Below are positions 11,641 to 58,651 of a DNA stretch of 64,000 bases, piece by piece. Within the stretch, counting starts at the first letter, position 1. Each line of letters opens with the position of its first letter. Below the pieces are notes generated by a model that ran no database searches, was not told where the DNA came from, and saw nothing but the letters and a program-made list of their open reading frames with translations. The stretch covers positions 62,001 to 126,000 of IMG/VR virus record IMGVR_UViG_3300024308_000016. One strand, given 5' to 3'. Made by a program: the position numbers and the translations under genes.

Positions 11641-11661
11641 CTCTAATAGAAAGCCTGCATC

Positions 11662-34553: not shown

Positions 34554-34597
34554 ATACATCCCCACCTAGAGCCGCAAGGGTCTAGGTGGGGATGTAT
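34554..34597 (+). terminator. long hairpin preceding promoter P3
   Basis: ATACATCCCCACCTAGAGCC-GCAA-GGGTCTAGGTGGGGATGTAT. Confidence 0.65.
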
Positions 34598-34616
34598 GCC
34601 GTATCTAGAAACTTTC

Positions 34617-34639
34617 AGTCACATATACTCTACTTGAGG
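34617..34639 (+). promoter_or_regulatory. phage promoter copy P3
   Basis: AGTCACATATACTCTACTTGAGG; flanks nearly identical to P6. Confidence 0.75.
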
Positions 34640-45399: not shown

Positions 45400-45443
45400 A
45401 GCTCCGCTGTCTCAGCCCCTTGTAGGGGCTGAGATGGAGGGTC

Positions 45444-45481
45444 TTTGTAGATTACTGAGGTCACTTACACTTTACTTGAGG
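45444..45481 (+). promoter_or_regulatory. phage promoter copy P5
   Basis: TTTGTAG-N8-GGTCACTTACACTTTACTTGAGG. Confidence 0.8.
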
Positions 45482-50070: not shown

Positions 50071-50162
50071 TTTGGATTGGATGCGTAGGTAAGCGTGTTT
50101 CCACACGCCCACCCCGCCAGTGACCACTGGCTAAAGTTGCTTGTACTTTATTTTTTGTCCCC

Positions 50163-50200
50163 TTTGTGGAAGTTTTCAGTCACATATACTCTACTTGAGG
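50163..50200 (+). promoter_or_regulatory. phage promoter copy P6
   Basis: TTTGTGG-N8-AGTCACATATACTCTACTTGAGG. Confidence 0.75.
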
Positions 50201-50242: not shown

Positions 50243-50851
50243 ATGACCAGCAAGCCCCTGAACATCGCAGCTGCCCAGATTCCTGCCCCTGATACGACTC
50301 CCACTCGTTCGCGCTTTAACTTCCCGCGGGTGGCCGAGGACGCCCGCTACGATGACCGCGACTACTGTGGCCGTGACCATGAACGTGAAGAGCGTACCCG
50401 TGAACGCGAAGACCTGGCCCGTGAACGTGACCTCGAACGCGCTGACCGCGATCGTGAACGCGCAGACCGTGCTCGTGCTCGTGACGACCGCCGCCGCGAA
50501 CGTGACTACGGCCGCTCCAGCGACGCCTATCGCTGTGCCCGCATCTCGGCACCCAGTCGCCATACGCCCGTGCTCAACGGCGTAGACTTGAGTATCGCTG
50601 AGCAGCGCTTCCTCAACGATCGCGTCCAGGCCATGAGCGAAGAGATCCTGGACCTGATGGCCTATGCCGAGAACACCCGTGAGCGCATTGCCCGTGAGCA
50701 GCGTCTGCTGGCTGATCGTCTGGTTGAGATCAAGGAGTTGACTGTGCTTCGTGACGCCGGACTGGAGCGCCTGAGCGCGATGCTGACCAAGCCGGCTCCC
50801 GCTCCTGCTCCTGCTGCTCCGCTTGAAGTCCCGACGTCCGATACACCTTGA
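50243..50851 (+). CDS. R/D/E mixed-charge low-complexity and coiled-coil protein
   Basis: RDHEREERTREREDLARERDLERADRDRER segment, then a helical region and a PAPAPA tail. Confidence 0.75.
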   Translation: MTSKPLNIAAAQIPAPDTTPTRSRFNFPRVAEDARYDDRDYCGRDHEREERTREREDLARERDLERADRDRERADRARARDDRRRERDYGRSSDAYRCARISAPSRHTPVLNGVDLSIAEQRFLNDRVQAMSEEILDLMAYAENTRERIAREQRLLADRLVEIKELTVLRDAGLERLSAMLTKPAPAPAPAAPLEVPTSDTP

Positions 50852-51089: not shown

Positions 51090-51170
51090 TCCCAGCTCCC
51101 TCATCTCCGGCAGCCTTCGGGCTGTCGGAGGTATTGTTTTTTGTCGTCCTCTAATAGAAAGTCCCTGATC

Positions 51171-51730: not shown

Positions 51731-52948
51731 ATGGTCAATCCCGCTACCGCCATCCCCCGCAGCCAATGGAAGTTCCCCATCGGTCCTGATCGCGACACGA
51801 ATGCGTTCTTCTTGTTTCACTCTGTGCGGTCCGTGACTGCCGACGAGAACCGCGCCGCAGAAGTGGTGCTGCTCGACGCGCTGGTGCAGCACGCTAAAAA
51901 TGAGCTCAAGGAGGCTGAGGCCGTCGCTACTTTGCGCATCATCCAGACCTACGGCACCACGGAGCTGTGGGCGGGCGAGTCCGTCCGCAGCCTGGTGCTC
52001 CTCGTGCGGGAATACATGGACGCCAAAGTAAATGCTGCGCCTGCGAACTCCGAGTTCGACCGATACAAAACGCGGGTCATCGCCATGGCGCGCATCAAGA
52101 GCCCTCAGGACGTCCTGCATGAGATGCGCAAGTGGAGTGCTCGCCACATCGCGGTCGCCAGTGTAACGATCCAGCATCTGAAGGTGGTACGTGACGCCTT
52201 TTGCCTGACGGTGGGATTTTCCCAGTACCTGGAGGCGTTCAACGAGGAGATGGAGCGCATCTGCAAAGACGCCGGCATCGTCAACCGCGCTCCGGCCCTG
52301 TTCAAGACCGAGGACAAGGAGTTCCACGCGAGCTACAAGAATATCGATCACCTCTTGACGGTCGACTTCCTGACTAAGGTGCCCCTGGTTCTGCAAAAGC
52401 TCAGCCATTCTACCGATCCCCAGTTCTCGGACATCATGGTGCTGGTCGATTCGTTCAAGCGCACGATAGGCTACCAGGAGCTGCAAGGCAGTCTGCTGCC
52501 CCTGATCATCGGGCACGTCGATTACCTCAAGAGTCAGGGCGCCTGGATCGACAATGACCGTGGCGTGCCTGGCCCTCCTGTGGAAATCCCTGAACGCCTG
52601 GCCAAACAGCTGTACGCGTTCAACGAAGCGCTGGTCACCAAAAAGCCAGCCTGGGCGCTGAGTGTGTTTCGGATCATCAGCAAGTCCATCGCTGAGCAGC
52701 CGGCAGATGTTCAGGCGGCTGCGTTCACCAAGCTCAAGGCTCTGAGTGTGGACTTCCCCACGTTCACACGCCTGAACCTGGCTATGGCGCGCCGTCGCGC
52801 TACAGGTGAGCTCTTCAAGGCCATCGACACCATGAGTCGCACGCTGGGCCTGGATCCTCACCTGAGTGATGCTGAGGCCGGTATGGGGCTGGATCGGGAG
52901 ATCGAAGCGACTGTGGAGTTCATCATCGAGACCTTCAACCGCCGTTGA
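51731..52948 (+). CDS. hypothetical helical protein
   Basis: 405 aa; TAGAAAGG upstream. Confidence 0.8.
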   Translation: MVNPATAIPRSQWKFPIGPDRDTNAFFLFHSVRSVTADENRAAEVVLLDALVQHAKNELKEAEAVATLRIIQTYGTTELWAGESVRSLVLLVREYMDAKVNAAPANSEFDRYKTRVIAMARIKSPQDVLHEMRKWSARHIAVASVTIQHLKVVRDAFCLTVGFSQYLEAFNEEMERICKDAGIVNRAPALFKTEDKEFHASYKNIDHLLTVDFLTKVPLVLQKLSHSTDPQFSDIMVLVDSFKRTIGYQELQGSLLPLIIGHVDYLKSQGAWIDNDRGVPGPPVEIPERLAKQLYAFNEALVTKKPAWALSVFRIISKSIAEQPADVQAAAFTKLKALSVDFPTFTRLNLAMARRRATGELFKAIDTMSRTLGLDPHLSDAEAGMGLDREIEATVEFIIETFNRR

Positions 52949-53010
52949 TCGGCTTCATGCCTGGGGCACCTGCTCCAGGCACTTCCCAACCCTCTAATAG
53001 AAAGTTCGAT

Positions 53011-54048
53011 ATGTCCAAAGACCGCAAGACCGCCATCAGTGAGATGATCGCTCGCTTCGATCTCTATAAGACCGAGGCGGGGATTATCCCTGTCCATCTG
53101 TCGCTGTTGATCATCTCCACGGCCTCGATACGTGGGCAGCTGCGCCGTTGGGTCGACAGCCAAGAGCCCTCCCAGGCTTTCCTGGCTGCCGTCGAAGCAT
53201 TCAAGGTCGAAGCCAACAATCTGAGCGACGGCTTTCGCAAAATCGTCGAGACGGCTATCTCAGCTCGGGCTAATCCCTCGGTTGATTCCCTGGAATACCT
53301 GCAGCGGGACCTGCAGGCTTTGGCCTCGGATGTCTATCACTTCAAGTGGACGATCCCTCACCTGCTGATCACGGCTTTGGGGATCAACTACACCGTGCTT
53401 GAGTCTGTGACTCAGGTCAGCAATGACATCAACTGCTGTGTGCGGGCGATCGAGACTGAAGGTGTGACAGGGTGCTCGTTCATGGAGGACGCTAGCTTCG
53501 GTGCTAAGCGTCTGAGCCAAGAGCGCGAAAAGCTGCGTATCATCATCTCTGGCATCATCGACCACCTCAATCGCTACCTGACCAACAAGTCCGAGGGCTA
53601 CAGCGGCACTCCCAGGCAGCGTACGGACGCACTGCTCGCCCGTATCCATCAGCTGCCGACGGAGCAAGGCAAGTTCGTCAAGGAGTACCTTCGATGGGCA
53701 GCTACGGGCTTTCACACGTTCCATGGAAGGATCGAAGATGTATTGCGGGCTCTGAACCCAGGCCGTGAGCACTATCGCCAGGACTTCACTGCGTTGACGG
53801 GAATAACCACCCAGCAGCTGGGGTTGCTGAAGGAGCGTTACAGCCAAAGGGAAAAGGCTGCCGATGAGCTCGAAGCCTTCAGCCAGTTGGGTGGAGTGCG
53901 GGCTCCTGGTCTGACGGGCATTGAAGCTCGCTACTGGCGCGATCAGATCAACCAGCTCAGTGCACTCATCCAGGCCCAGGTGTCTGACTCTTTGCTGTGG
54001 GCTCAAAGCCAGCCCATGTACCAGGGATTGGATCCGACCGCTCTGTAG
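53011..54048 (+). CDS. hypothetical helical protein
   Basis: AATAGAAAG at 52996. Confidence 0.75.
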   Translation: MSKDRKTAISEMIARFDLYKTEAGIIPVHLSLLIISTASIRGQLRRWVDSQEPSQAFLAAVEAFKVEANNLSDGFRKIVETAISARANPSVDSLEYLQRDLQALASDVYHFKWTIPHLLITALGINYTVLESVTQVSNDINCCVRAIETEGVTGCSFMEDASFGAKRLSQEREKLRIIISGIIDHLNRYLTNKSEGYSGTPRQRTDALLARIHQLPTEQGKFVKEYLRWAATGFHTFHGRIEDVLRALNPGREHYRQDFTALTGITTQQLGLLKERYSQREKAADELEAFSQLGGVRAPGLTGIEARYWRDQINQLSALIQAQVSDSLLWAQSQPMYQGLDPTAL

Positions 54049-54051
54049 ACC

Positions 54052-54394
54052 GAAGGTGTAAACTAAAGATACACTTTTGTATATAGAGTGGCGGTGATAG
54101 CACCTGACCAAAAGACCCGGGCACCCGAAAGGGAGCTCGGGCCCCCACTCCCAGCAGCACTCGAAGAACACTCCGAACACTCCAGCTCACTCCAGTCACT
54201 CCAATCCTAGCGTAGCTTTACTCTGTAAAGCGAAGCTCTGATTAGCTAGAGCAGGGAACCATGCTCTAGCAACTGTGGTGTGCTCGCTAGTGAGCGTAGA
54301 TCTCAAGAGTACACACTACAGCCTGAGGATCAACTTTGAGCTGTAATAGCTGATGAGCAAAGGACTCAACCTACAACACAAGGAACTCGTACCC
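54052..54394. ncRNA. candidate structured non-coding RNA or leader with six CACTC(C/G) repeats
   Basis: No convincing ORF; consecutive hairpins, one with a GAAA tetraloop; repeats at 54146, 54158, 54169, 54178, 54188, 54197. Confidence 0.45.
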
Positions 54395-54508
54395 ATGACT
54401 CGTATCCTGCAGATCGCCGATGCGATCTTCTCCCCTATCTGCCTGATCATCGTAGCTGGCGCTGGCTTGGCCATGTGCTACGCTTTGGGACAGCTCATGC
54501 GTTTGTAA
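54395..54508 (+). CDS. 37-aa single-TM peptide (below the ORF-track cutoff)
   Basis: AAGGA upstream; MTRILQIADAIFSPICLIIVAGAGLAMCYALGQLMRL; followed by two hairpins. Confidence 0.6.
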   Translation: MTRILQIADAIFSPICLIIVAGAGLAMCYALGQLMRL

Positions 54509-54629
54509 GCGCCTAGGCCATCGACTTGCCGTATACACTACGGCAGTACCTCCACCACAGTCCCCTACTAAGAGGGGACTGTGGTGGGTGTATGTTGTGT
54601 ACTTAAATAGAAAGGTAAGGTAGAGTGTT

Positions 54630-54899
54630 ATGCAGGCAATTATAATCGCTGTATGTGCGGCGGTGGGACTTATGGTCTCTGTGGGGTGTGCGTTTATGCC
54701 CGCTTACAGCAAAGCTGCTGGTCTGATGATCGATGGCAAGATAAGCCACGAGCAGTTCGATCGGGTGATACTGAAGTACAAAGTACTGTACTCTGCGCTG
54801 GGCTGGCCTGTATATACAGGTGTGGTGGGTTCATTGGTGCTGGCTTTTCTGTATATCGCTGACTTGTTTGATCAAGTCGGTATGTTGATTGGAGGATAA
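54630..54899 (+). CDS. small two-TM membrane protein
   Basis: AATAGAAAG at 54606; two hydrophobic helices. Confidence 0.65.
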   Translation: MQAIIIAVCAAVGLMVSVGCAFMPAYSKAAGLMIDGKISHEQFDRVILKYKVLYSALGWPVYTGVVGSLVLAFLYIADLFDQVGMLIGG

Positions 54900-54903
54900 G
54901 AAA

Positions 54904-55182
54904 ATGGCTGTACATGTGTTTTGGGTGCTTATAAGCATCGTAGGCGCTATAGTGGCAGTGATGGGTGTATGGATGGGGTATATGCAGGCTGGGCACTATC
55001 GGCGTGACCTGAGCCTGCAGTACGGTCACTGGCACGTATTGAGCCGTGAGCAAGAGCGCAGGGCTTTGTGGATATGGATCAAAGGCACTATCGGCGGGGG
55101 CGTGGTGATAGCGTTGATGGCTGCGGTGACTCTGTGGCCTATACTGCTGACTGAATATAACCGCATGGTAACTGGGGGATAA
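54904..55182 (+). CDS. small two-TM membrane protein
   Basis: GGAGG upstream; two hydrophobic helices. Confidence 0.65.
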   Translation: MAVHVFWVLISIVGAIVAVMGVWMGYMQAGHYRRDLSLQYGHWHVLSREQERRALWIWIKGTIGGGVVIALMAAVTLWPILLTEYNRMVTGG

Positions 55183-55186
55183 GAAG

Positions 55187-55474
55187 ATGACTGATTACGA
55201 CAAGGCGATAGTATTGGTGGTGATGTGGTGCACGGGAGTGACGGTGCTCGCCTTCATGATAGCCTATATGGTCAATGGCTCGGCGTATGTGGAGCGCTGC
55301 AAACGTCGCGATGGCGGGGGCTACTTCTACGAGATGCATGAGCGCGACCAGCCGGGCAAGCTGCTGTACTGCGCCAAGTGGGTGCCGGTATGGTGGGTGG
55401 CGATCGCTGTCATCTACATCGGTCTGTTTGCCAGTGAGGCGATGTTTGTATACCGGACACTGACCGCTGGATAA
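55187..55474 (+). CDS. small two-TM membrane protein
   Basis: Two hydrophobic helices flanking a loop with two Cys. Confidence 0.65.
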   Translation: MTDYDKAIVLVVMWCTGVTVLAFMIAYMVNGSAYVERCKRRDGGGYFYEMHERDQPGKLLYCAKWVPVWWVAIAVIYIGLFASEAMFVYRTLTAG

Positions 55475-55513
55475 AGGCAGCTAGACAAGCTCCTCCTAAA
55501 TAGAAAGGACTAA

Positions 55514-55939
55514 GTGTATATGGTATCGGTCTATGTGCCGCTCTCAGTGGAGCGTAATGATCGCACATGTATGCATGTGCAGATACTGGAGCATGACTGC
55601 AAAAGCGAGAAGCTTATCGGTCTGACCGTACAGGAGAAGGGCCCAGTGGCAGGGAGATGGTTCAAACTTCCCACTACTGGACGGATGTACAGGTTCAATG
55701 AGGAAGATCGGGAAACATACATGGGTCAGAAACTCATGTTCCGCTCTCCCATGACGTGCTCGACTGAAGGAGGCTTTTGCACAGTGTGCACAGGCGCTCC
55801 TATGGGCGTGATCGAGAGATCGGTCGAGCCCAACCGCTGGGACCAGCGCTACAGTAGCATACGGCAAGAACGCCTGCAGATGCTCGAATCCAACCGCAAA
55901 TTCAAACGTGTAATCAAGAAAGACAGGAAACAATCATGA
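55514..55939 (+). CDS. stand-alone RNA polymerase beta-prime zinc-binding domain homolog
   Basis: EHDC...GR...RSPMTCSTEGGFCTVCTG reproduces the beta-prime DC...RS.x.C-x6-C-x2-C.G Zn site; AATAGAAAG at 55499. Confidence 0.65.
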   Translation: MYMVSVYVPLSVERNDRTCMHVQILEHDCKSEKLIGLTVQEKGPVAGRWFKLPTTGRMYRFNEEDRETYMGQKLMFRSPMTCSTEGGFCTVCTGAPMGVIERSVEPNRWDQRYSSIRQERLQMLESNRKFKRVIKKDRKQS

Positions 55940-56487
55940 AGAAGATCCATCGCACCATCGCTCAACTGCAAGCATCGGCCATCTTGCGTGGCCTCAAATA
56001 CCGGGACCGTAAGCGTCAAGCGCCGGTATACCGTGATGAGCACGGCAAGCGCTTCATACCGCAGAAGATCGTCTCGCCTGCGTTCATCAACAAGCAAGAC
56101 AACGCGTGGAACCAGATGCGTGATATGGCCAAGCATGCCAGTATCTACCAGCTCGCCCGCATGTTCCGCTACCTGTATAATAGCGACCGGAGCATGATGG
56201 CCTTGTGCAGCTACACGCCGGATCCGGAGACTGCGTATTGCTATCACCGCAAGGGCGCACTGATGCGGGTTCCGGGCAAGAGCGTGCTGGACAGCGTGTT
56301 CTTTTCCAACTGCAAGGATGCCATGGCCATTGCAATGCTGGGTACGGGCTGGTACGACAAGGTACAAATGCTGCGCCGAGAGAACTGGGAGAGCTATGAC
56401 ATACTAGTCACAGATGACTCTCCTGATGTCGACTGGTCCGAGATCAGCGTAAAGAAGGCCGCTATCGCGGCTCAAGAGCAGGCATAA
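55936..56487 (+). CDS. hypothetical protein
   Basis: ATGA coupling; followed by hairpin and T tract 56494-56540. Confidence 0.7.
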   Translation: MKKIHRTIAQLQASAILRGLKYRDRKRQAPVYRDEHGKRFIPQKIVSPAFINKQDNAWNQMRDMAKHASIYQLARMFRYLYNSDRSMMALCSYTPDPETAYCYHRKGALMRVPGKSVLDSVFFSNCKDAMAIAMLGTGWYDKVQMLRRENWESYDILVTDDSPDVDWSEISVKKAAIAAQEQA

Positions 56488-56593
56488 CTGACCCTCCCAG
56501 ACCCTCACGGGTCTGGGAGTGGTGTACCTTCTTTTTTTGTCTGCAATAGGATATACAAAAACAAACACACAACTTTATAGATTGTGCGGGGCC

Positions 56594-56631
56594 TTTGTAA
56601 CGCGCCATGGTCACTTAAACCTTACTTGAGG
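56594..56631 (+). promoter_or_regulatory. phage promoter copy P7, heading the nvRNAP gp68/PicA operon
   Basis: TTTGTAA-N8-GGTCACTTAAACCTTACTTGAGG. Confidence 0.75.
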
Positions 56632-56648: not shown

Positions 56649-57098
56649 ATGAAAGCTGTTATGAACCGCAACAAGATTTCGGAAGTTGAAGTGACTGTTT
56701 TGACCCAGTTGTTGACAACTGCCATGCAAGACGCCATCGATAACACGACGTCCATGGGGTATGCCCATCTTCGCTGTGTGGAGGAAGACATCGAGAAAGC
56801 GTGGGTGCGCCGCCAGGCATTTGCTATCGATGTGTTTCGCAAGATGCGGCAAGCCGAGGGTTTGAGCGCAACCATCGAGATTGCGCAAGACAACATCTCC
56901 GGCGTTCGCATCAACGTCTTGGAGACGGAAAGCGGGGAGTTCTACTATGAGGTCGTCTATCTTCTCGACGGAGCTAAGAACGTCCTCAAGCCTCCTTCGT
57001 ATTGGGAGATGAACGAGACGGTGAATATGGCGGACTTGCTGCATGACGCCCAACTCGACATCCAGCAAAGAGCAAGCAACGAGAAAGGAAAGACATGA
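56649..57098 (+). CDS. hypothetical protein
   Basis: First ORF after P7; ATGA-coupled to the next gene. Confidence 0.7.
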   Translation: MKAVMNRNKISEVEVTVLTQLLTTAMQDAIDNTTSMGYAHLRCVEEDIEKAWVRRQAFAIDVFRKMRQAEGLSATIEIAQDNISGVRINVLETESGEFYYEVVYLLDGAKNVLKPPSYWEMNETVNMADLLHDAQLDIQQRASNEKGKT

Positions 57099-58651
57099 AG
57101 ATTGAGTCGGATTCTGGCACTATCTTGAGCCAGGATAAAAGTGTGCGTATCTCGCACACCGAGGATGGCGTCAAGCGTGGGGTGACTTTTCCGATCACCC
57201 TGTACAAGCAAGACTACTTCAAAAGCGACGAGACGTTCTCCAGCATCAACAGCTATTGGGCCCAGCTGCCCCAGGCTGACCAAGATGAGATCTTCCGGAT
57301 CTACGAGAACATCCGTGAGCTGTTTGACTCGGTCAATGGGATCAAGGAGCTCAATGACGAACTGAAGGTGTATGTGGCCAACCTCATGGCTTTCCACAGC
57401 GCCCCAGATGTCGAGCGATGGATCCGCACTACCTCTGGGCTGGAAGTGCCCAAGAGCGTGCAGCAAGAGTACAGCTTTGACGTGGACAAGAACACGACGC
57501 GGGACCAGACCTACATCTACTCCGACTACCTGGGGTTGATGAGCCTGTCGGTGATCCTGCGTGCGATGATCCCGATCTGGGCCGTCTACAACAAGACCAT
57601 ACGCAGTGACAGCGGCAAGTCCTCCAAGGACACGCACTCGTTCCAATTGCTGGAGAAGTCCAGCATCTACAAGTGCGAGCCTATGGAGCGGCTGCGCCGG
57701 TATATCCAGGCCAACCTCAATAAGAGCTCCCACACCGGCAACCACACGCTGGAGTTGCTGTGCTCGGACGACATGCCCGAGATCAACCTGGCGCTGGTAT
57801 GCGTGAGAAAGCTGTGCCTGGGAGAGCTCAGGGTCGATGATCCCAAGCAAAACCTGGCGGCGCTGGTGTACAACTACATCGTGGACAGACCTCCTCCACA
57901 GGGCCAGGACTTCTCCAAGCGCGTGCTGGAGAAGAAGATCCCCACTGAAGGTGGCGGGGAATCCGGGGAAAACAATGGATCGACCCTGGAACTGTACAAG
58001 GCCCGTTCGACCGTCACCGTCGGTCGGATCGCCGAAATGGAGTACGCGTGGAAGGATCCCCACAACCTGGCCAGGTATCTGTGCCCTGAATACGTACCCA
58101 GTCATCTGGATCGAGCACTGGAGACGACCCAAGAGCTGTACACGCATACCGTGCATCCGTGCATGTTGACGCTGGCTCAGTGGGTACTGGCTCCGGTATT
58201 CCCACCGATGGGTCTGTTCTATATGGACACCAACCTGATCCTGCGGGCATTCGCAGTGACCGAGACCGTGTTGCGCGGACGAGGTTTCAAGTCTTTGGCT
58301 CTGCTGTCGTCGGCGTATTCGCTCGATGACGAGGACGAAGGCATGCGAGTGACACCTGTGGGCTCCAAGAGCCATATCGGAGCAGAGATTCAGGAGCGGA
58401 TGCTGGGACCCTTCCCCTACGCCCGTGAACAAAGAAAGCGCACGGCTACTCCTGTGCGCACCTGCTTTGTCACGGAAGACATCAAGGACTTGTCGTCGAA
58501 GTTCTTGGAGCACACCTGGCGCGCTACTGCAGACATCGAGTTGGTCACTGAGGTGCTGCGCACCTCCAGCGTTCGACGGATCCCCATCCCTCCGAACTTG
58601 AGAAGTGAACTGGCTCTGATGCTGCTGGACGCTGAAGAGCGGTTCGAGTAA
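57095..58651 (+). CDS. non-virion RNA polymerase specificity subunit (phiKZ gp68-like)
   Basis: 518 aa; INSYWAQLP..QDEIF.IY, TY..SDY.GL..LS..LRAMIPIW and QW.L..VFPP patterns; synteny. Confidence 0.7.
   Translation: MKIESDSGTILSQDKSVRISHTEDGVKRGVTFPITLYKQDYFKSDETFSSINSYWAQLPQADQDEIFRIYENIRELFDSVNGIKELNDELKVYVANLMAFHSAPDVERWIRTTSGLEVPKSVQQEYSFDVDKNTTRDQTYIYSDYLGLMSLSVILRAMIPIWAVYNKTIRSDSGKSSKDTHSFQLLEKSSIYKCEPMERLRRYIQANLNKSSHTGNHTLELLCSDDMPEINLALVCVRKLCLGELRVDDPKQNLAALVYNYIVDRPPPQGQDFSKRVLEKKIPTEGGGESGENNGSTLELYKARSTVTVGRIAEMEYAWKDPHNLARYLCPEYVPSHLDRALETTQELYTHTVHPCMLTLAQWVLAPVFPPMGLFYMDTNLILRAFAVTETVLRGRGFKSLALLSSAYSLDDEDEGMRVTPVGSKSHIGAEIQERMLGPFPYAREQRKRTATPVRTCFVTEDIKDLSSKFLEHTWRATADIELVTEVLRTSSVRRIPIPPNLRSELALMLLDAEERFE

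What the first reader, a model, noticed from the sequence alone, without database searches (positions are those of the whole stretch)
54052..54394. Structured non-coding region with six anti-Shine-Dalgarno-like repeats
About 340 nt with no convincing ORF. It contains stems at 54054-54078, 54116-54141 (GAAA tetraloop), 54214-54231, 54245-54270, 54274-54320 and 54317-54345; the last two overlap and are mutually exclusive. A 57-nt stretch between the stems carries CACTC(C/G) six times at 9-12 nt spacing. On the + strand this is complementary to GGAGUG; on the - strand it is a string of GGAG sites. Speculative options: an RNA that blocks GGAG-type ribosome-binding sites while AATAGAAAG-led phage genes escape; a sponge for ribosomes or GGA-binding proteins (flanks do not fit the CsrA ANGGA consensus); a regulatory leader; or origin iterons.
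Basis: partly seen in the sequence, partly recalled or inferred. Interest (0 to 1): 0.7.

Follow-up and report, generated by a model that had tools for sequence, protein, structure and literature searches.

The report
Structured phage RNA with CACUCC repeats
An uncultivated giant (272 kb) phiKZ-like phage has a non-coding, hairpin-rich stretch holding open a G-poor strand with five to six CACUCC copies; it looks like a docking platform on an RNA, but its partner, strand of expression and function are unproven.

Summary
Six CACTC(C/G) copies lie in 57 nt at spacings of 12, 11, 9, 10 and 9. This cluster is unique in the 272,393-bp genome and exceeds anything seen in simulated genomes.

The element is larger than reported. 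It continues through a 37-codon membrane-peptide ORF to a 16-20-bp hairpin at 54547-54592, and it lies between two canonical phage terminators.

The + strand folds better than the - strand (z -4.5 against -2.6). Three stem substitutions in a 98% strain give G.U pairs only on the + strand, and a more diverged strain keeps hairpin 54245-54270 with different, still complementary, arms.

The repeat cores are 35/36 identical while all spacers differ. Copy number varies between strains (5-6), and core 1 is not conserved.

There is no Rfam family and no homologue beyond strain level. I found no phage CsrA, Hfq or cold-shock gene, no specific mRNA target and no origin signature.

My best reading (about 0.35) is a + strand structured leader or ncRNA whose accessible C-rich array is a multivalent, sequence-specific decoy. 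A general GGAG-RBS blocker is unlikely, because about 40% of the phage's own genes use GGAG/GAGG. Evidence of expression is weak and not strand-specific.

The parts
54051..54079 (+). A/U-rich hairpin directly after the stop codon of gene 53011-54048, followed by UUUUG. It may be a weak terminator-like element or the 5' boundary of the element.
   Evidence: -9.0 kcal/mol, z -3.5. Canonical terminators of this phage are a GC hairpin followed by cTTTTTTTGTC.
54075..54091 (+). TTTTGTATATAGAGTGG motif, a candidate phage promoter of a second class. Support is weak.
   Evidence: A second copy, matching at 15 of these 17 positions and followed by a similar small hairpin, lies at genome 33909 in a divergent intergenic region 80 nt upstream of a TACTTGAGG promoter. 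A roughly 13%-diverged strain keeps CTTTTGCTTATATAGTGGCGG (loose end).
54086..54150 (+). 5' domain: hairpins 54093-54104 and 54116-54141 (GAAA loop), with a predicted closing helix GAGUGG/CCACUC that uses repeat copy 1.
   Evidence: The closing helix is doubtful: 54086 G>A (L002, X5) and 54148 C>G (X4, X11) both break it.
54142..54208 (+). G-poor single-stranded tract (C 32, G 7 of 67 nt) carrying CACUC(C/G) cores at 54146, 54158, 54169, 54178, 54188 and 54197.
   Evidence: for uniqueness; tied for second among distinct 67-nt windows of the genome for C-minus-G excess. P(core unpaired) is 0.51, 0.09, 0.11, 0.50, 0.46 and 0.86, against a regional mean of 0.10; one strain lacks one 9-nt unit.
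54203..54243 (+).
   Evidence: -13.0 kcal/mol, z -3.5. The X12 substitution 54232 G>A falls in an internal loop.
54245..54270 (+). The most stable local hairpin for its length. Its stem is kept, with different letters, in a diverged strain.
   Evidence: -16.6 kcal/mol, z -5.4. loose end of X11: the inner stem reads CTCTTGCA...TGCAAGAG where the window has (CT)AGAGCA...TGCT(CTAG). Both arms changed and remain complementary.
54273..54321 (+). Long hairpin. The basal 10-bp stem is conserved and the apical part is variable.
   Evidence: window and L002 variants (-20.6 and -19.6 kcal/mol). 54312 C>T turns G-C into G.U on the + strand only, and 7 of the 9 L002 substitutions in the intergenic region fall in its apical part.
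54316..54345 (+). Weaker alternative hairpin that shares about 5 nt with the previous stem.
   Evidence: -10.5 kcal/mol, z -2.2. It does not form in the full-length MFE structures.
54395..54508 (+). 37-codon ORF for a single-pass hydrophobic peptide, with AAGGAA 9 nt upstream.
   Evidence: translation. Called as a gene in two public assemblies. No substitutions in L002. No homologues.
54526..54545 (+). Small hairpin between the ORF and the large hairpin.
   Evidence: -10.2 kcal/mol. 54533 A>G turns A-U into G.U on the + strand only.
54547..54592 (+). Hairpin of 16-20 bp followed by a U-rich GUAUGUUGUGU tail. It is the likely 3' end of the unit (terminator-like).
   Evidence: I1; -41.1 kcal/mol, z -7.0; terminator-like. 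In L002, X5 and X12 the loop changes at 4 of 6 positions while the stem keeps pairing through 54563 C>T (U.G on the + strand only).
54606..54614 (+). AATAGAAAG motif in front of the next gene (54630-54899), the first of three ~90-aa two-pass membrane proteins. It marks the downstream boundary.

Best explanation
The element is a non-coding, strongly structured part of a + strand phage transcript. It is either a ~300-nt leader of the 37-aa membrane-peptide ORF or a ~0.5-kb RNA running from about 54090 to the hairpin at 54547-54592.

Hairpin domains on both sides keep a 57-67-nt G-poor tract single-stranded. That tract presents 4-6 CACUCC cores separated by 3-6 variable nucleotides. I think it most likely acts as a multivalent, sequence-specific docking platform (a decoy or sponge). 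It would bind several copies, or an oligomer, of an RNA-binding factor that reads CACUCC, or several G-rich GGAGUG-type RNA segments.

Shown: the array is real, unique and accessible in silico; the region is non-coding; the hairpins are unusually stable; and some are maintained through sequence change.

Inferred: the + strand is the active one, the cores are the functional units, and binding is the function. The partner is unknown.

My confidence that it is a functional + strand RNA structure is about 0.55. My confidence that it works specifically as a decoy or sponge is about 0.35.
For: - The array is unique and beyond chance.
- The cores are 35/36 identical while all five spacers differ (CAGCAG, AAGAA, GAA, AGCT, AGT). 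This argues for selection on the hexamer rather than drift after duplication.
- Spacing is variable (9-12), and copy number varies between strains (9-nt unit absent in X4). Both are tolerated on a flexible single strand.
- Four of six cores are predicted unpaired at 0.46-0.86, against a 0.10 background.
- Fold z is -4.5 on the + strand against -2.6 on the - strand, and -4.5 for 54086-54660.
- Three stem substitutions give G.U only on the + strand (54312, 54533, 54563). The loop of the large hairpin changes at 4 of 6 positions while the stem is kept.
- Hairpin 54245-54270 is kept, with both arms changed, in a ~13%-diverged strain.
- All flanking genes, all 14 copies of the promoter-like ACTTGAGG core (looser variants too) and all 22 canonical terminators lie on the + strand. 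Terminators at 51137 and 56533 bracket the locus.
- Indels in relatives exclude coding.
- RNA-type libraries contain the stretch: X12 at 54100-54790, X5 at 53453-55357, X20 at 53833-54068.
- Giant phiKZ-like phages are known to make intergenic and 5'UTR-derived sRNAs of unknown function (PMC11512511).
Against: - No strand-specific expression data exist. The RNA-type runs are assembled contigs without direction.
- The region-only coverage in X5 can equally be mosaic divergence of that strain. X4 shows such a gradient, from 13% to 1% divergence across 52030-55500.
- There is no homologue beyond strains about 87% or more identical, so no real covariation test was possible.
- Against a 98% strain, the repeats' 0/67 changes are what the ~1% background predicts.
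- In the ~13%-diverged strain, at least two cores are hit by indels or substitutions (54146-54151, 54190), and core 1 is changed in X4 as well.
- Two stem substitutions (54086, 54303) would fit the - strand better.
- Compensatory change in a DNA palindrome can arise by template switching without selection.
- No candidate binder was found: no phage CsrA, CSD or Hfq, and the neighbouring proteins are uninformative ORFans.
Confidence: 0.35

Rival explanations
1. DNA-level array. The direct hexamers, spaced about one helical turn apart (mean 10.2 bp), are binding sites for a phage or host DNA-binding protein. That protein could be a regulator of the downstream membrane-protein genes, a roadblock, or an initiator at iterons next to the AT-rich 54054-54085 segment.
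For: - The mean spacing of 10.2 bp keeps the sites within about 2 bp of one helical face.
- An AT-rich segment and palindromes lie beside the array.
- The candidate promoter motif at 54075-54091 lies 55-120 bp upstream of the sites.
- Compensatory change in palindromes does not distinguish DNA from RNA.
Against: - Individual spacings range from 9 to 12 bp, which is loose for head-to-tail DNA binding.
- The cores are only 6 bp, against 17-22 bp for classical iterons.
- There is no GC-skew inflection; cumulative skew falls monotonically across the genome.
- No replication or DNA-binding gene is recognisable nearby.
- The G.U-type stem changes point to RNA on the + strand.
Confidence: 0.15
2. The tract has no sequence-specific partner. 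It is selected only to be unstructured, as a G-poor spacer or ribosome standby site in the leader of the 37-aa ORF, and the repeats are by-products of replication slippage.
For: - One pair of units is an exact 9-nt tandem duplication, and copy number differs between strains.
- Cores are altered in a diverged strain.
- A/C-rich, G-poor sequence cannot fold, and such tails are known from the literature to serve as standby sites (my own knowledge, not checked here).
- A small hydrophobic ORF with a long structured leader recalls type I toxin mRNAs.
Against: - Cores at 35/36 identity with completely different spacers are not what slippage plus drift gives.
- The ORF's own start region is predicted fairly open (0.45-0.76 unpaired), so a standby site is not obviously needed.
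- No other G-poor leader of this kind exists in the genome.
Confidence: 0.15
3. Rho-loading (rut-like) site. The C-rich, G-poor tract, with pyrimidine-C dinucleotides recurring about every 10 nt, would fit the six RNA-binding sites of a Rho hexamer. The hairpins downstream would act as pause sites. The result would be factor-dependent termination or attenuation between the upstream genes and the membrane-protein cluster, or titration of Rho.
For: - C 32 and G 7 in 67 nt, tied for second among distinct 67-nt windows of the genome for C-minus-G excess.
- The tract is untranslated, about 100 nt past a stop codon, and is followed by four hairpins.
- No canonical intrinsic terminator follows gene 53011-54048.
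Against: - The phage carries its own split multisubunit RNA polymerase and is phiKZ-like. Such phages transcribe independently of the host apparatus, and many do so inside a protein shell that excludes host proteins (literature; not tested for this phage).
- A rut site needs no conserved hexamer.
- The phage otherwise uses strong intrinsic terminators (22 copies).
Confidence: 0.1
4. One reading: the + strand RNA pairs through CUCC with GGAG-type Shine-Dalgarno sequences in general, and so shifts translation to (AA)TAGAAAG-led phage genes.
For: - Two RBS classes exist in this phage.
- TAGAAAG-type start regions hybridise far less with the array than GGAG-type ones (-10.8 against -19.0 kcal/mol), although this follows from base composition.
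- There are precedents. C-rich sRNA regions pair with SD sequences (RoxS: PMC5419742, PMC8216469). T4 RegB inactivates GGAG-type early messages (my own knowledge).
Against: - About 40% of the phage's own genes use GGAG/GAGG.
- CACUCC lacks one C of the true anti-SD CACCUCC, giving only 4 bp with a plain GGAG.
- GGAGUG precedes only about 8 phage starts and is not enriched (69 observed, 74 expected).
- The array pairs with phage start regions no better than shuffled arrays do.
- A trans-acting RNA would need to match the abundance of the cell's mRNA.
Confidence: 0.06
5. The - strand is the active one: an RNA with five GGAGUG sites that soaks up 30S subunits or a GGA-binding protein of the CsrA/RsmA type.
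For: - Five GGA/GGAG sites lie about 10 nt apart on the - strand.
- The - strand also folds better than shuffles (z -2.6).
- Two stem substitutions fit the - strand.
Against: - No - strand gene, promoter-like motif or terminator lies near the element.
- Fold significance is weaker than on the + strand.
- No site has the A of ANGGA.
- The phage has no CsrA gene.
- Three stem substitutions would be A.C mismatches on the - strand.
Confidence: 0.05

Closest known systems
Protein-sponge RNAs CsrB/CsrC, RsmX/Y/Z and CrcZ
   Same: A short motif repeated many times in accessible positions of an otherwise hairpin-rich non-coding RNA, with variable spacing and variable copy number between relatives.
   Different: Their motifs are GGA (ANGGA) or A-rich AANAANAA, and they are bound by CsrA/RsmA or by Hfq/Crc. 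Here the motif is CACUCC on the + strand. No Rfam model matches, no partner is known, and the element is phage-encoded and sits inside an operon.
C-rich-region sRNAs of Firmicutes (RoxS/RsaE, RNAIII-type UCCC motifs)
   Same: Several C-rich, anti-SD-like motifs are exposed between or on hairpins and pair with G-rich ribosome-binding sites (PMC5419742, PMC8216469).
   Different: Those are ~100-nt stand-alone sRNAs with 3-4 CCC/UCCC motifs, mostly in loops. Here there are 4-6 CACUCC cores in one linear tract of a much longer RNA, no sequence similarity, and no specific target in the phage.
Rho utilisation (rut) sites of factor-dependent terminators
   Same: An untranslated, C-rich, G-poor, unstructured tract of 60-80 nt, followed by pause hairpins.
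   Different: A rut site has no conserved hexamer. The phage has its own RNA polymerase and abundant intrinsic terminators. Rho involvement cannot be tested here.
ToxI and phage pseudo-ToxI repeat RNAs (type III toxin-antitoxin mimicry)
   Same: A phage-borne array of direct RNA repeats that could act as a decoy for a sequence-specific RNA-binding or RNA-cleaving host protein. Copy number changes by unit gain and loss.
   Different: ToxI units are 34-38 nt, exact tandem repeats, and each folds into a defined pseudoknot. Here the cores are 6 nt with unrelated spacers, and no toxin gene is adjacent.
sRNAs of giant phiKZ-like phages (for example 201phi2-1 sRNA005 and the phiKZ gp182 leader RNA)
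   Same: A non-coding RNA element in an intergenic or 5'UTR position of a phiKZ-like jumbo phage, with unknown function (PMC11512511).
   Different: Those are under 250 nt, were defined by mapped 5' and 3' ends, and are conserved by position across genera. They are not described as carrying a repeat array. Here there is no end mapping and no cross-genus conservation.

Membership tests
CsrB/RsmZ-type CsrA sponge | Many GGA motifs, mostly ANGGA, on the transcribed strand, in loops or single-stranded spacers | tested here: not met
   The + strand has CACUCC, not GGA. The - strand has five GGA sites, but none has A at -2 (UUGGA, CUGGA x2, UCGGA, UGGGA).
CsrB/RsmZ-type CsrA sponge | Match to a curated covariance model of the family | tested here: not met
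   Rfam 15 cmscan at E up to 10 on both strands gave only noise hits far below the gathering scores.
CsrB/RsmZ-type CsrA sponge | A CsrA/RsmA partner | not testable with these tools
   The phage has no CsrA gene. The host is unknown.
C-rich-region (CRR) base-pairing sRNA such as RoxS/RsaE | Exposed C-rich motifs complementary to SD sequences | tested here: met
   The cores contain CUCC, and four of six are predicted unpaired at 0.46-0.86.
C-rich-region (CRR) base-pairing sRNA such as RoxS/RsaE | Defined targets with extended complementarity around the start site | tested here: not met
   The array pairs with 297 phage start regions no better than 20 shuffled arrays do. Host targets cannot be tested.
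C-rich-region (CRR) base-pairing sRNA such as RoxS/RsaE | A short, independent transcript with its own promoter and terminator | tested here: inconclusive
   There is only a weak candidate promoter motif. A terminator-like hairpin lies 390 nt downstream, beyond a small ORF. No end mapping is available.
Rho-dependent terminator (rut plus pause) | A C-over-G tract of 60-80 nt, unstructured and untranslated | tested here: met
   C 32 and G 7 in 67 nt, tied for second among distinct 67-nt windows of the genome for C-minus-G excess. It starts 94 nt after the stop codon.
Rho-dependent terminator (rut plus pause) | Termination depends on Rho acting on the transcribing polymerase | not testable with these tools
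   The phage encodes its own split multisubunit RNAP. The host and its Rho are unknown.
Iteron-type replication origin | Iterons of about 17-22 bp, an AT-rich unwinding element and an adjacent initiator gene | tested here: not met
   The cores are 6 bp with unrelated spacers. An AT-rich 32 bp is present at 54054-54085, but no initiator-like protein lies nearby.
Iteron-type replication origin | A strand-composition switch at the origin | tested here: not met
   Cumulative GC skew declines across the whole genome, with no turning point at the locus.
Type III antitoxin (ToxI-like) repeat RNA | Exact tandem repeats of 34-38 nt followed by a toxin endoribonuclease gene | tested here: not met
   The units are 9-12 nt with divergent spacers. 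The downstream ORFs are small membrane proteins.
Type I toxin mRNA | A small hydrophobic ORF behind a long structured leader that occludes its start site, plus an antisense or divergent sRNA | tested here: inconclusive
   A 37-aa hydrophobic ORF and a ~300-nt structured leader are present. But the start region is predicted open, and no antisense promoter or terminator was seen.

The most novel reading that the evidence does not exclude
The RNA is a phage-made decoy that imitates the 3' end of 16S rRNA (CACCUCC is close to CACUCC; two copies read UCACUCC). It would soak up something that normally acts on the anti-Shine-Dalgarno region. Candidates are a host defence endoribonuclease of the MazF type that cuts at or near the anti-SD, a ribosome-maturation or initiation factor, or SD-like leader sequences. 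Meanwhile many phage genes start translation through (AA)TAGAAAG, which would pair with the extreme 3' tail (CUUUCUA) rather than with CCUCC. That would be an RNA-based way for a giant phage to protect or re-programme translation initiation.
Probability: 0.08. Interest if true: 0.85.

Novelty: new variant of a known kind. Interest (0 to 1): 0.45.

Why it matters
Non-coding RNAs of giant phages are only now being mapped, and none has a known mechanism. A phage RNA built like a bacterial sponge RNA but with a new C-rich, anti-SD-like motif would be a tractable entry point. The motif is short, repeated and easy to mutate, and its partner could be fished out directly.

The same genome also shows an unusually uniform second start-site motif, (AA)TAGAAAG, next to ordinary GGAG sites. 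The locus therefore bears on how giant phages sort their messages for translation.

If the tract proves to be only an unstructured spacer or a DNA-binding array, the finding is ordinary.

Tried and rejected
Homologue searches, all negative beyond strain level:
- megablast and blastn of 53000-55500 against 50,697 phage records;
- tblastn of the upstream protein;
- The search for related loci with the upstream protein and with the conserved 518-aa protein in viral, metagenome and genome collections. These returned only the source contig and a 53%-identical fragment that lacks the region;
- exact and gapped DNA patterns;
- protein searches with the upstream gene, its C-terminus and the small ORF.

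Every CACTC cluster of four or more copies found in them was a tandem, mostly coding-type repeat, unrelated to this element.

The closest cultured relative, Burkholderia phage FLC9 (30% aa identity in a core protein), has no comparable array in its 321,833 bp.

Rfam gave no family on either strand at E up to 10. I recalled resemblances to 5S rRNA, 16S helix 45, a hammerhead core (CUGAUGAG at 54350) and a type I-F CRISPR repeat (GCCGUAUA at 54529). Rfam supports none of them, and one (the GGGAACC loop) is not conserved in the diverged strain. I dropped all four.

Target search: duplex energies of the array against 297 phage start regions were no better than for shuffled arrays.

Binder search: no phage CsrA, cold-shock or Hfq gene. 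Neighbouring proteins have no Pfam or PHROG family and only noise-level Atlas hits.

Conservation argument: I first read the low divergence of the region in X4 and X5 as constraint. I withdrew this because the strains are mosaics with steep divergence gradients.

Expression argument: region-only coverage in RNA-type runs cannot be separated from mosaic divergence and carries no strand information.

A third copy of ATATA..GTGGCGG (window 2054, - strand) lies inside a coding region and is probably chance.
Full report
**Context.** The window is bases 62001-126000 of a 272,393-bp IMG/VR virus record from a subsurface metagenome, estimated complete, with GC 56%. It is a distant phiKZ-like jumbo phage. 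Gene 55520-55939 matches phage RNA-polymerase beta-subunit fragments (phrog_2962 and phrog_3015, E 1e-10). The 518-aa protein at 57095-58651 (phrog_3209) finds 167 jumbo-phage records, the best being Burkholderia phage FLC9 at only 30% identity. Nothing in the cultured-phage collection resembles the DNA.

**The observation.** Gene 53011-54048 (+) ends at 54048, and the next credible start is ATG 54395. In between:
- The whole 347 nt has z -4.5 on the + strand and -2.6 on the - strand.
- CACTC(C/G) starts at 54146, 54158, 54169, 54178, 54188 and 54197.
- No other site in the genome has even four CACTC in 70 nt.
- Simulated genomes reach at most 4 copies of any 5-mer per 60 nt. The real genome exceeds that only here and in one coding repeat.
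- The tract 54142-54208 has 32 C and 7 G, tied for second among distinct 67-nt windows of the genome for C-minus-G excess.
- Four of the six cores are predicted unpaired with probability 0.46-0.86, against 0.10 for hexamers of the region.

Two copies are an exact 9-nt tandem duplication. Copy 1 and its predicted helix partner are both altered in other strains. The element continues to about 54600.

**Anatomy beyond the reported coordinates.** Downstream come:
- a 37-codon ORF for a hydrophobic single-pass peptide, called as a gene in two assemblies;
- a small hairpin at 54526-54545;
- a 16-20-bp hairpin at 54547-54592 with a U-rich tail (-41 kcal/mol, z -7.0);
- three ~90-aa two-pass membrane proteins.
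The 575 nt from 54086 to 54660 fold with z -4.5.

**Genome-wide signals**:
- A ~40-nt promoter-like motif ends in TACTTGAGG. Its ACTTGAGG core has 14 copies on the + strand, with further looser variants there; three bare ACTTGAGG octamers on the - strand lack the rest of the motif.
- Canonical terminators consist of a GC hairpin plus cTTTTTTTGTC: 22 copies, all on the + strand.
- (AA)TAGAAAG lies 5-13 nt before ATG in 39 + strand genes.

The locus lies between terminators at 51137 and 56533, with no TACTTGAGG promoter inside. One possible internal promoter is TTTTGTATATAGAGTGG at 54075-54091. A second copy matching at 15 of its 17 positions, also followed by a small GGUG/CACC hairpin, sits at genome 33909 in a divergent intergenic region upstream of a TACTTGAGG promoter. 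A diverged strain keeps most of it. This is a lead, not a demonstration.

**Coding potential.** The only ORF across the repeats (40 codons, GTG start) is destroyed by 1-2-nt indels at 54130, 54142, 54146, 54151, 54190 and 54208 in related strains.

**Known families.** Rfam 15 gives nothing on either strand, even at E 10.

**Relatives.** Every route to homologues failed beyond the strain level. FLC9 has no comparable array.

Strain-level variation does exist, because the phage occurs in many public runs.

*Logan contig L002, about 98% identical.* It has 15 substitutions between 54049 and 54600.
- Nine fall in predicted unpaired positions.
- Three turn Watson-Crick pairs into G.U on the + strand (54312, 54533, 54563). 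On the - strand these would be A.C mismatches.
- Two sit in the poorly defined apex of hairpin 54273-54321.
- One (54086) breaks the end of the putative closing helix.
- The loop of the large hairpin changes at 4 of 6 positions while its stem stays paired.

*A ~13%-diverged strain in run X11.* It keeps hairpin 54245-54270 with a different, still complementary, inner stem (CTCTTGCA/TGCAAGAG).

This is moderate evidence for selected + strand RNA hairpins. The caveat is that palindromes can co-mutate by template switching.

For the repeats themselves the strain data cut both ways. They are unchanged in L002, but at 1% background that is expected. One strain (X4) lacks one 9-nt unit, and X4 and X11 carry 54148 C>G in core 1. 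The diverged X11 strain has indels inside or beside cores 1 and 5.

Within this genome, the contrast between 35/36 identical core positions and five unrelated spacers is the best argument that the hexamer is the selected unit.

**Expression.** RNA-type libraries contain the stretch:
- X5 has one 1,827-nt contig over 53453-55279 at depth 41, and a second, shallower contig reaching 55357.
- X12, a size-fractionated transcriptomic library, covers 54100-54790.
- X20 covers 53833-54068.
X5 and X12 do not hold 5% of a 10-kb control stretch, which the DNA runs do hold.

These are direction-less assemblies. The strains are mosaics: X4 goes from 13% to 1% divergence across 52030-55500, and gene 51731-52948 differs at 106 of 405 codons between two strains that are otherwise 99% identical. 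I therefore treat this as weak support for transcription and as no evidence on strand.

**Mechanism.** The architecture is that of a docking platform on an RNA: clamp hairpins around a G-poor, accessible tract that repeats one hexamer with flexible spacing and variable copy number. This is how bacterial sponge RNAs are built, but the motif is new.

I found no partner. There is no phage CsrA, cold-shock or Hfq gene. The neighbouring proteins are uninformative. No phage start region has better-than-random complementarity.

(AA)TAGAAAG does occupy the Shine-Dalgarno position and would pair with a 16S tail ending CUUUCUA. In FLC9 the commonest 9-mer of the genome is a similarly uniform AAACAAGGA (33 copies on one strand, 2 on the other), though I did not map it relative to start codons. 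The pairing with 16S is inference, because the host is unknown.

Against that model, about 40% of the phage's own genes use GGAG/GAGG, CACUCC is one C short of the true anti-SD, and stoichiometry argues against a global effect.

The rivals I cannot exclude are:
- a DNA-binding array (mean spacing 10.2 bp);
- a merely unstructured spacer or standby site for the small ORF;
- a rut-like Rho-loading tract;
- a - strand GGAG RNA.
Their weights are given in the rival list.

**Verdict.** This is a real, statistically exceptional, probably RNA-level element of unknown function in an uncultivated giant phage. It belongs to no described family. In design it is closest to multi-motif sponge or C-rich-region RNAs, so I rate it a new variant of a known kind. 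Interest is moderate: there is no end mapping, no strand-specific expression, no deep conservation and no partner.

Noticed in passing
whole genome; in the window at 11646, 23045, 23414, 23834, 24782, 26947, 30486, 31852, 34670, 35245, 36521, 45518, 51154, 51712, 52997, 54607, 55500 and 60199: ATAGAAAG (mostly AATAGAAAG) occurs 39 times on the + strand and AATAGAAAG never on the - strand, always 5-13 nt before an ATG. It occupies the position that GGAGG/AAGGA takes in other genes. It is complementary to a 16S 3' tail ending CUUUCUA, so it is probably an unusual, very uniform ribosome-binding site; a promoter with a very short leader is the alternative. In FLC9 the commonest 9-mer is a similarly uniform, strand-biased AAACAAGGA, whose position relative to start codons I did not check.
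   Followed up: partly
window 34592-34639, 45434-45481, 50153-50200, 56584-56631 and about 10 more in the genome: A ~40-nt promoter-like motif, cTTTGTA-N13-CACtTAnACnnTACTTGAGG, found on the + strand only and usually 40-80 nt upstream of a start codon.
   Followed up: partly
window 356, 11630, 12457, 36502, 39778, 50151, 51137, 56533 and 14 more in the genome: Uniform intrinsic terminators, a GC-rich hairpin (often with a UUCG loop) followed by cTTTTTTTGTC. There are 22 copies, all on the + strand.
   Followed up: partly
window 51731-52948 and 55936-56487: Two genes are hypervariable between strains that are otherwise about 99% identical: 10% and 8% nucleotide divergence against L002. In the first, 54 codons differ non-synonymously and 52 synonymously. 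Strain X4 is 13% diverged there. The ncRNA lies inside this mosaic, ORFan-rich segment, which may be an accessory or host-interaction island.
   Followed up: partly
window 54395-55474: A run of four small membrane-protein genes: 37 aa with one predicted helix, then 89, 92 and 95 aa with two hydrophobic segments each. They have no family assignment, and the DNA here is among the most G-over-C-skewed in the genome (windows at 54570 and 55174).
   Followed up: partly
genome 33909-33925 (outside the window; locus L125 1410-1426): A second copy of TTTTGTATATA(A/G)(G/A)GTGG followed by a GGUG/CACC mini-hairpin, 80 nt upstream of a TACTTGAGG promoter in a divergent intergenic region. It may represent a second promoter class.
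   Followed up: partly
genome 9-36 and 272384-272393 (contig ends, outside the window): Homopolymer G runs of 28 and 10 nt at the two ends of the contig, probably sequencing or assembly artefacts. The record is classed as linear, with no terminal repeat.
   Followed up: no
window 50372-50440: The only other short-motif cluster in the genome: CGTGA five times in 60 nt, inside gene 50243-50851. It is a coding repeat (an Arg/Glu-rich periodic segment).
   Followed up: no
window 54350-54357 and 54526-54545: CUGAUGAG (the hammerhead core word) and a hairpin containing GCCGUAUA (reminiscent of a type I-F CRISPR repeat). Neither is supported by Rfam, so both are probably chance.
   Followed up: partly
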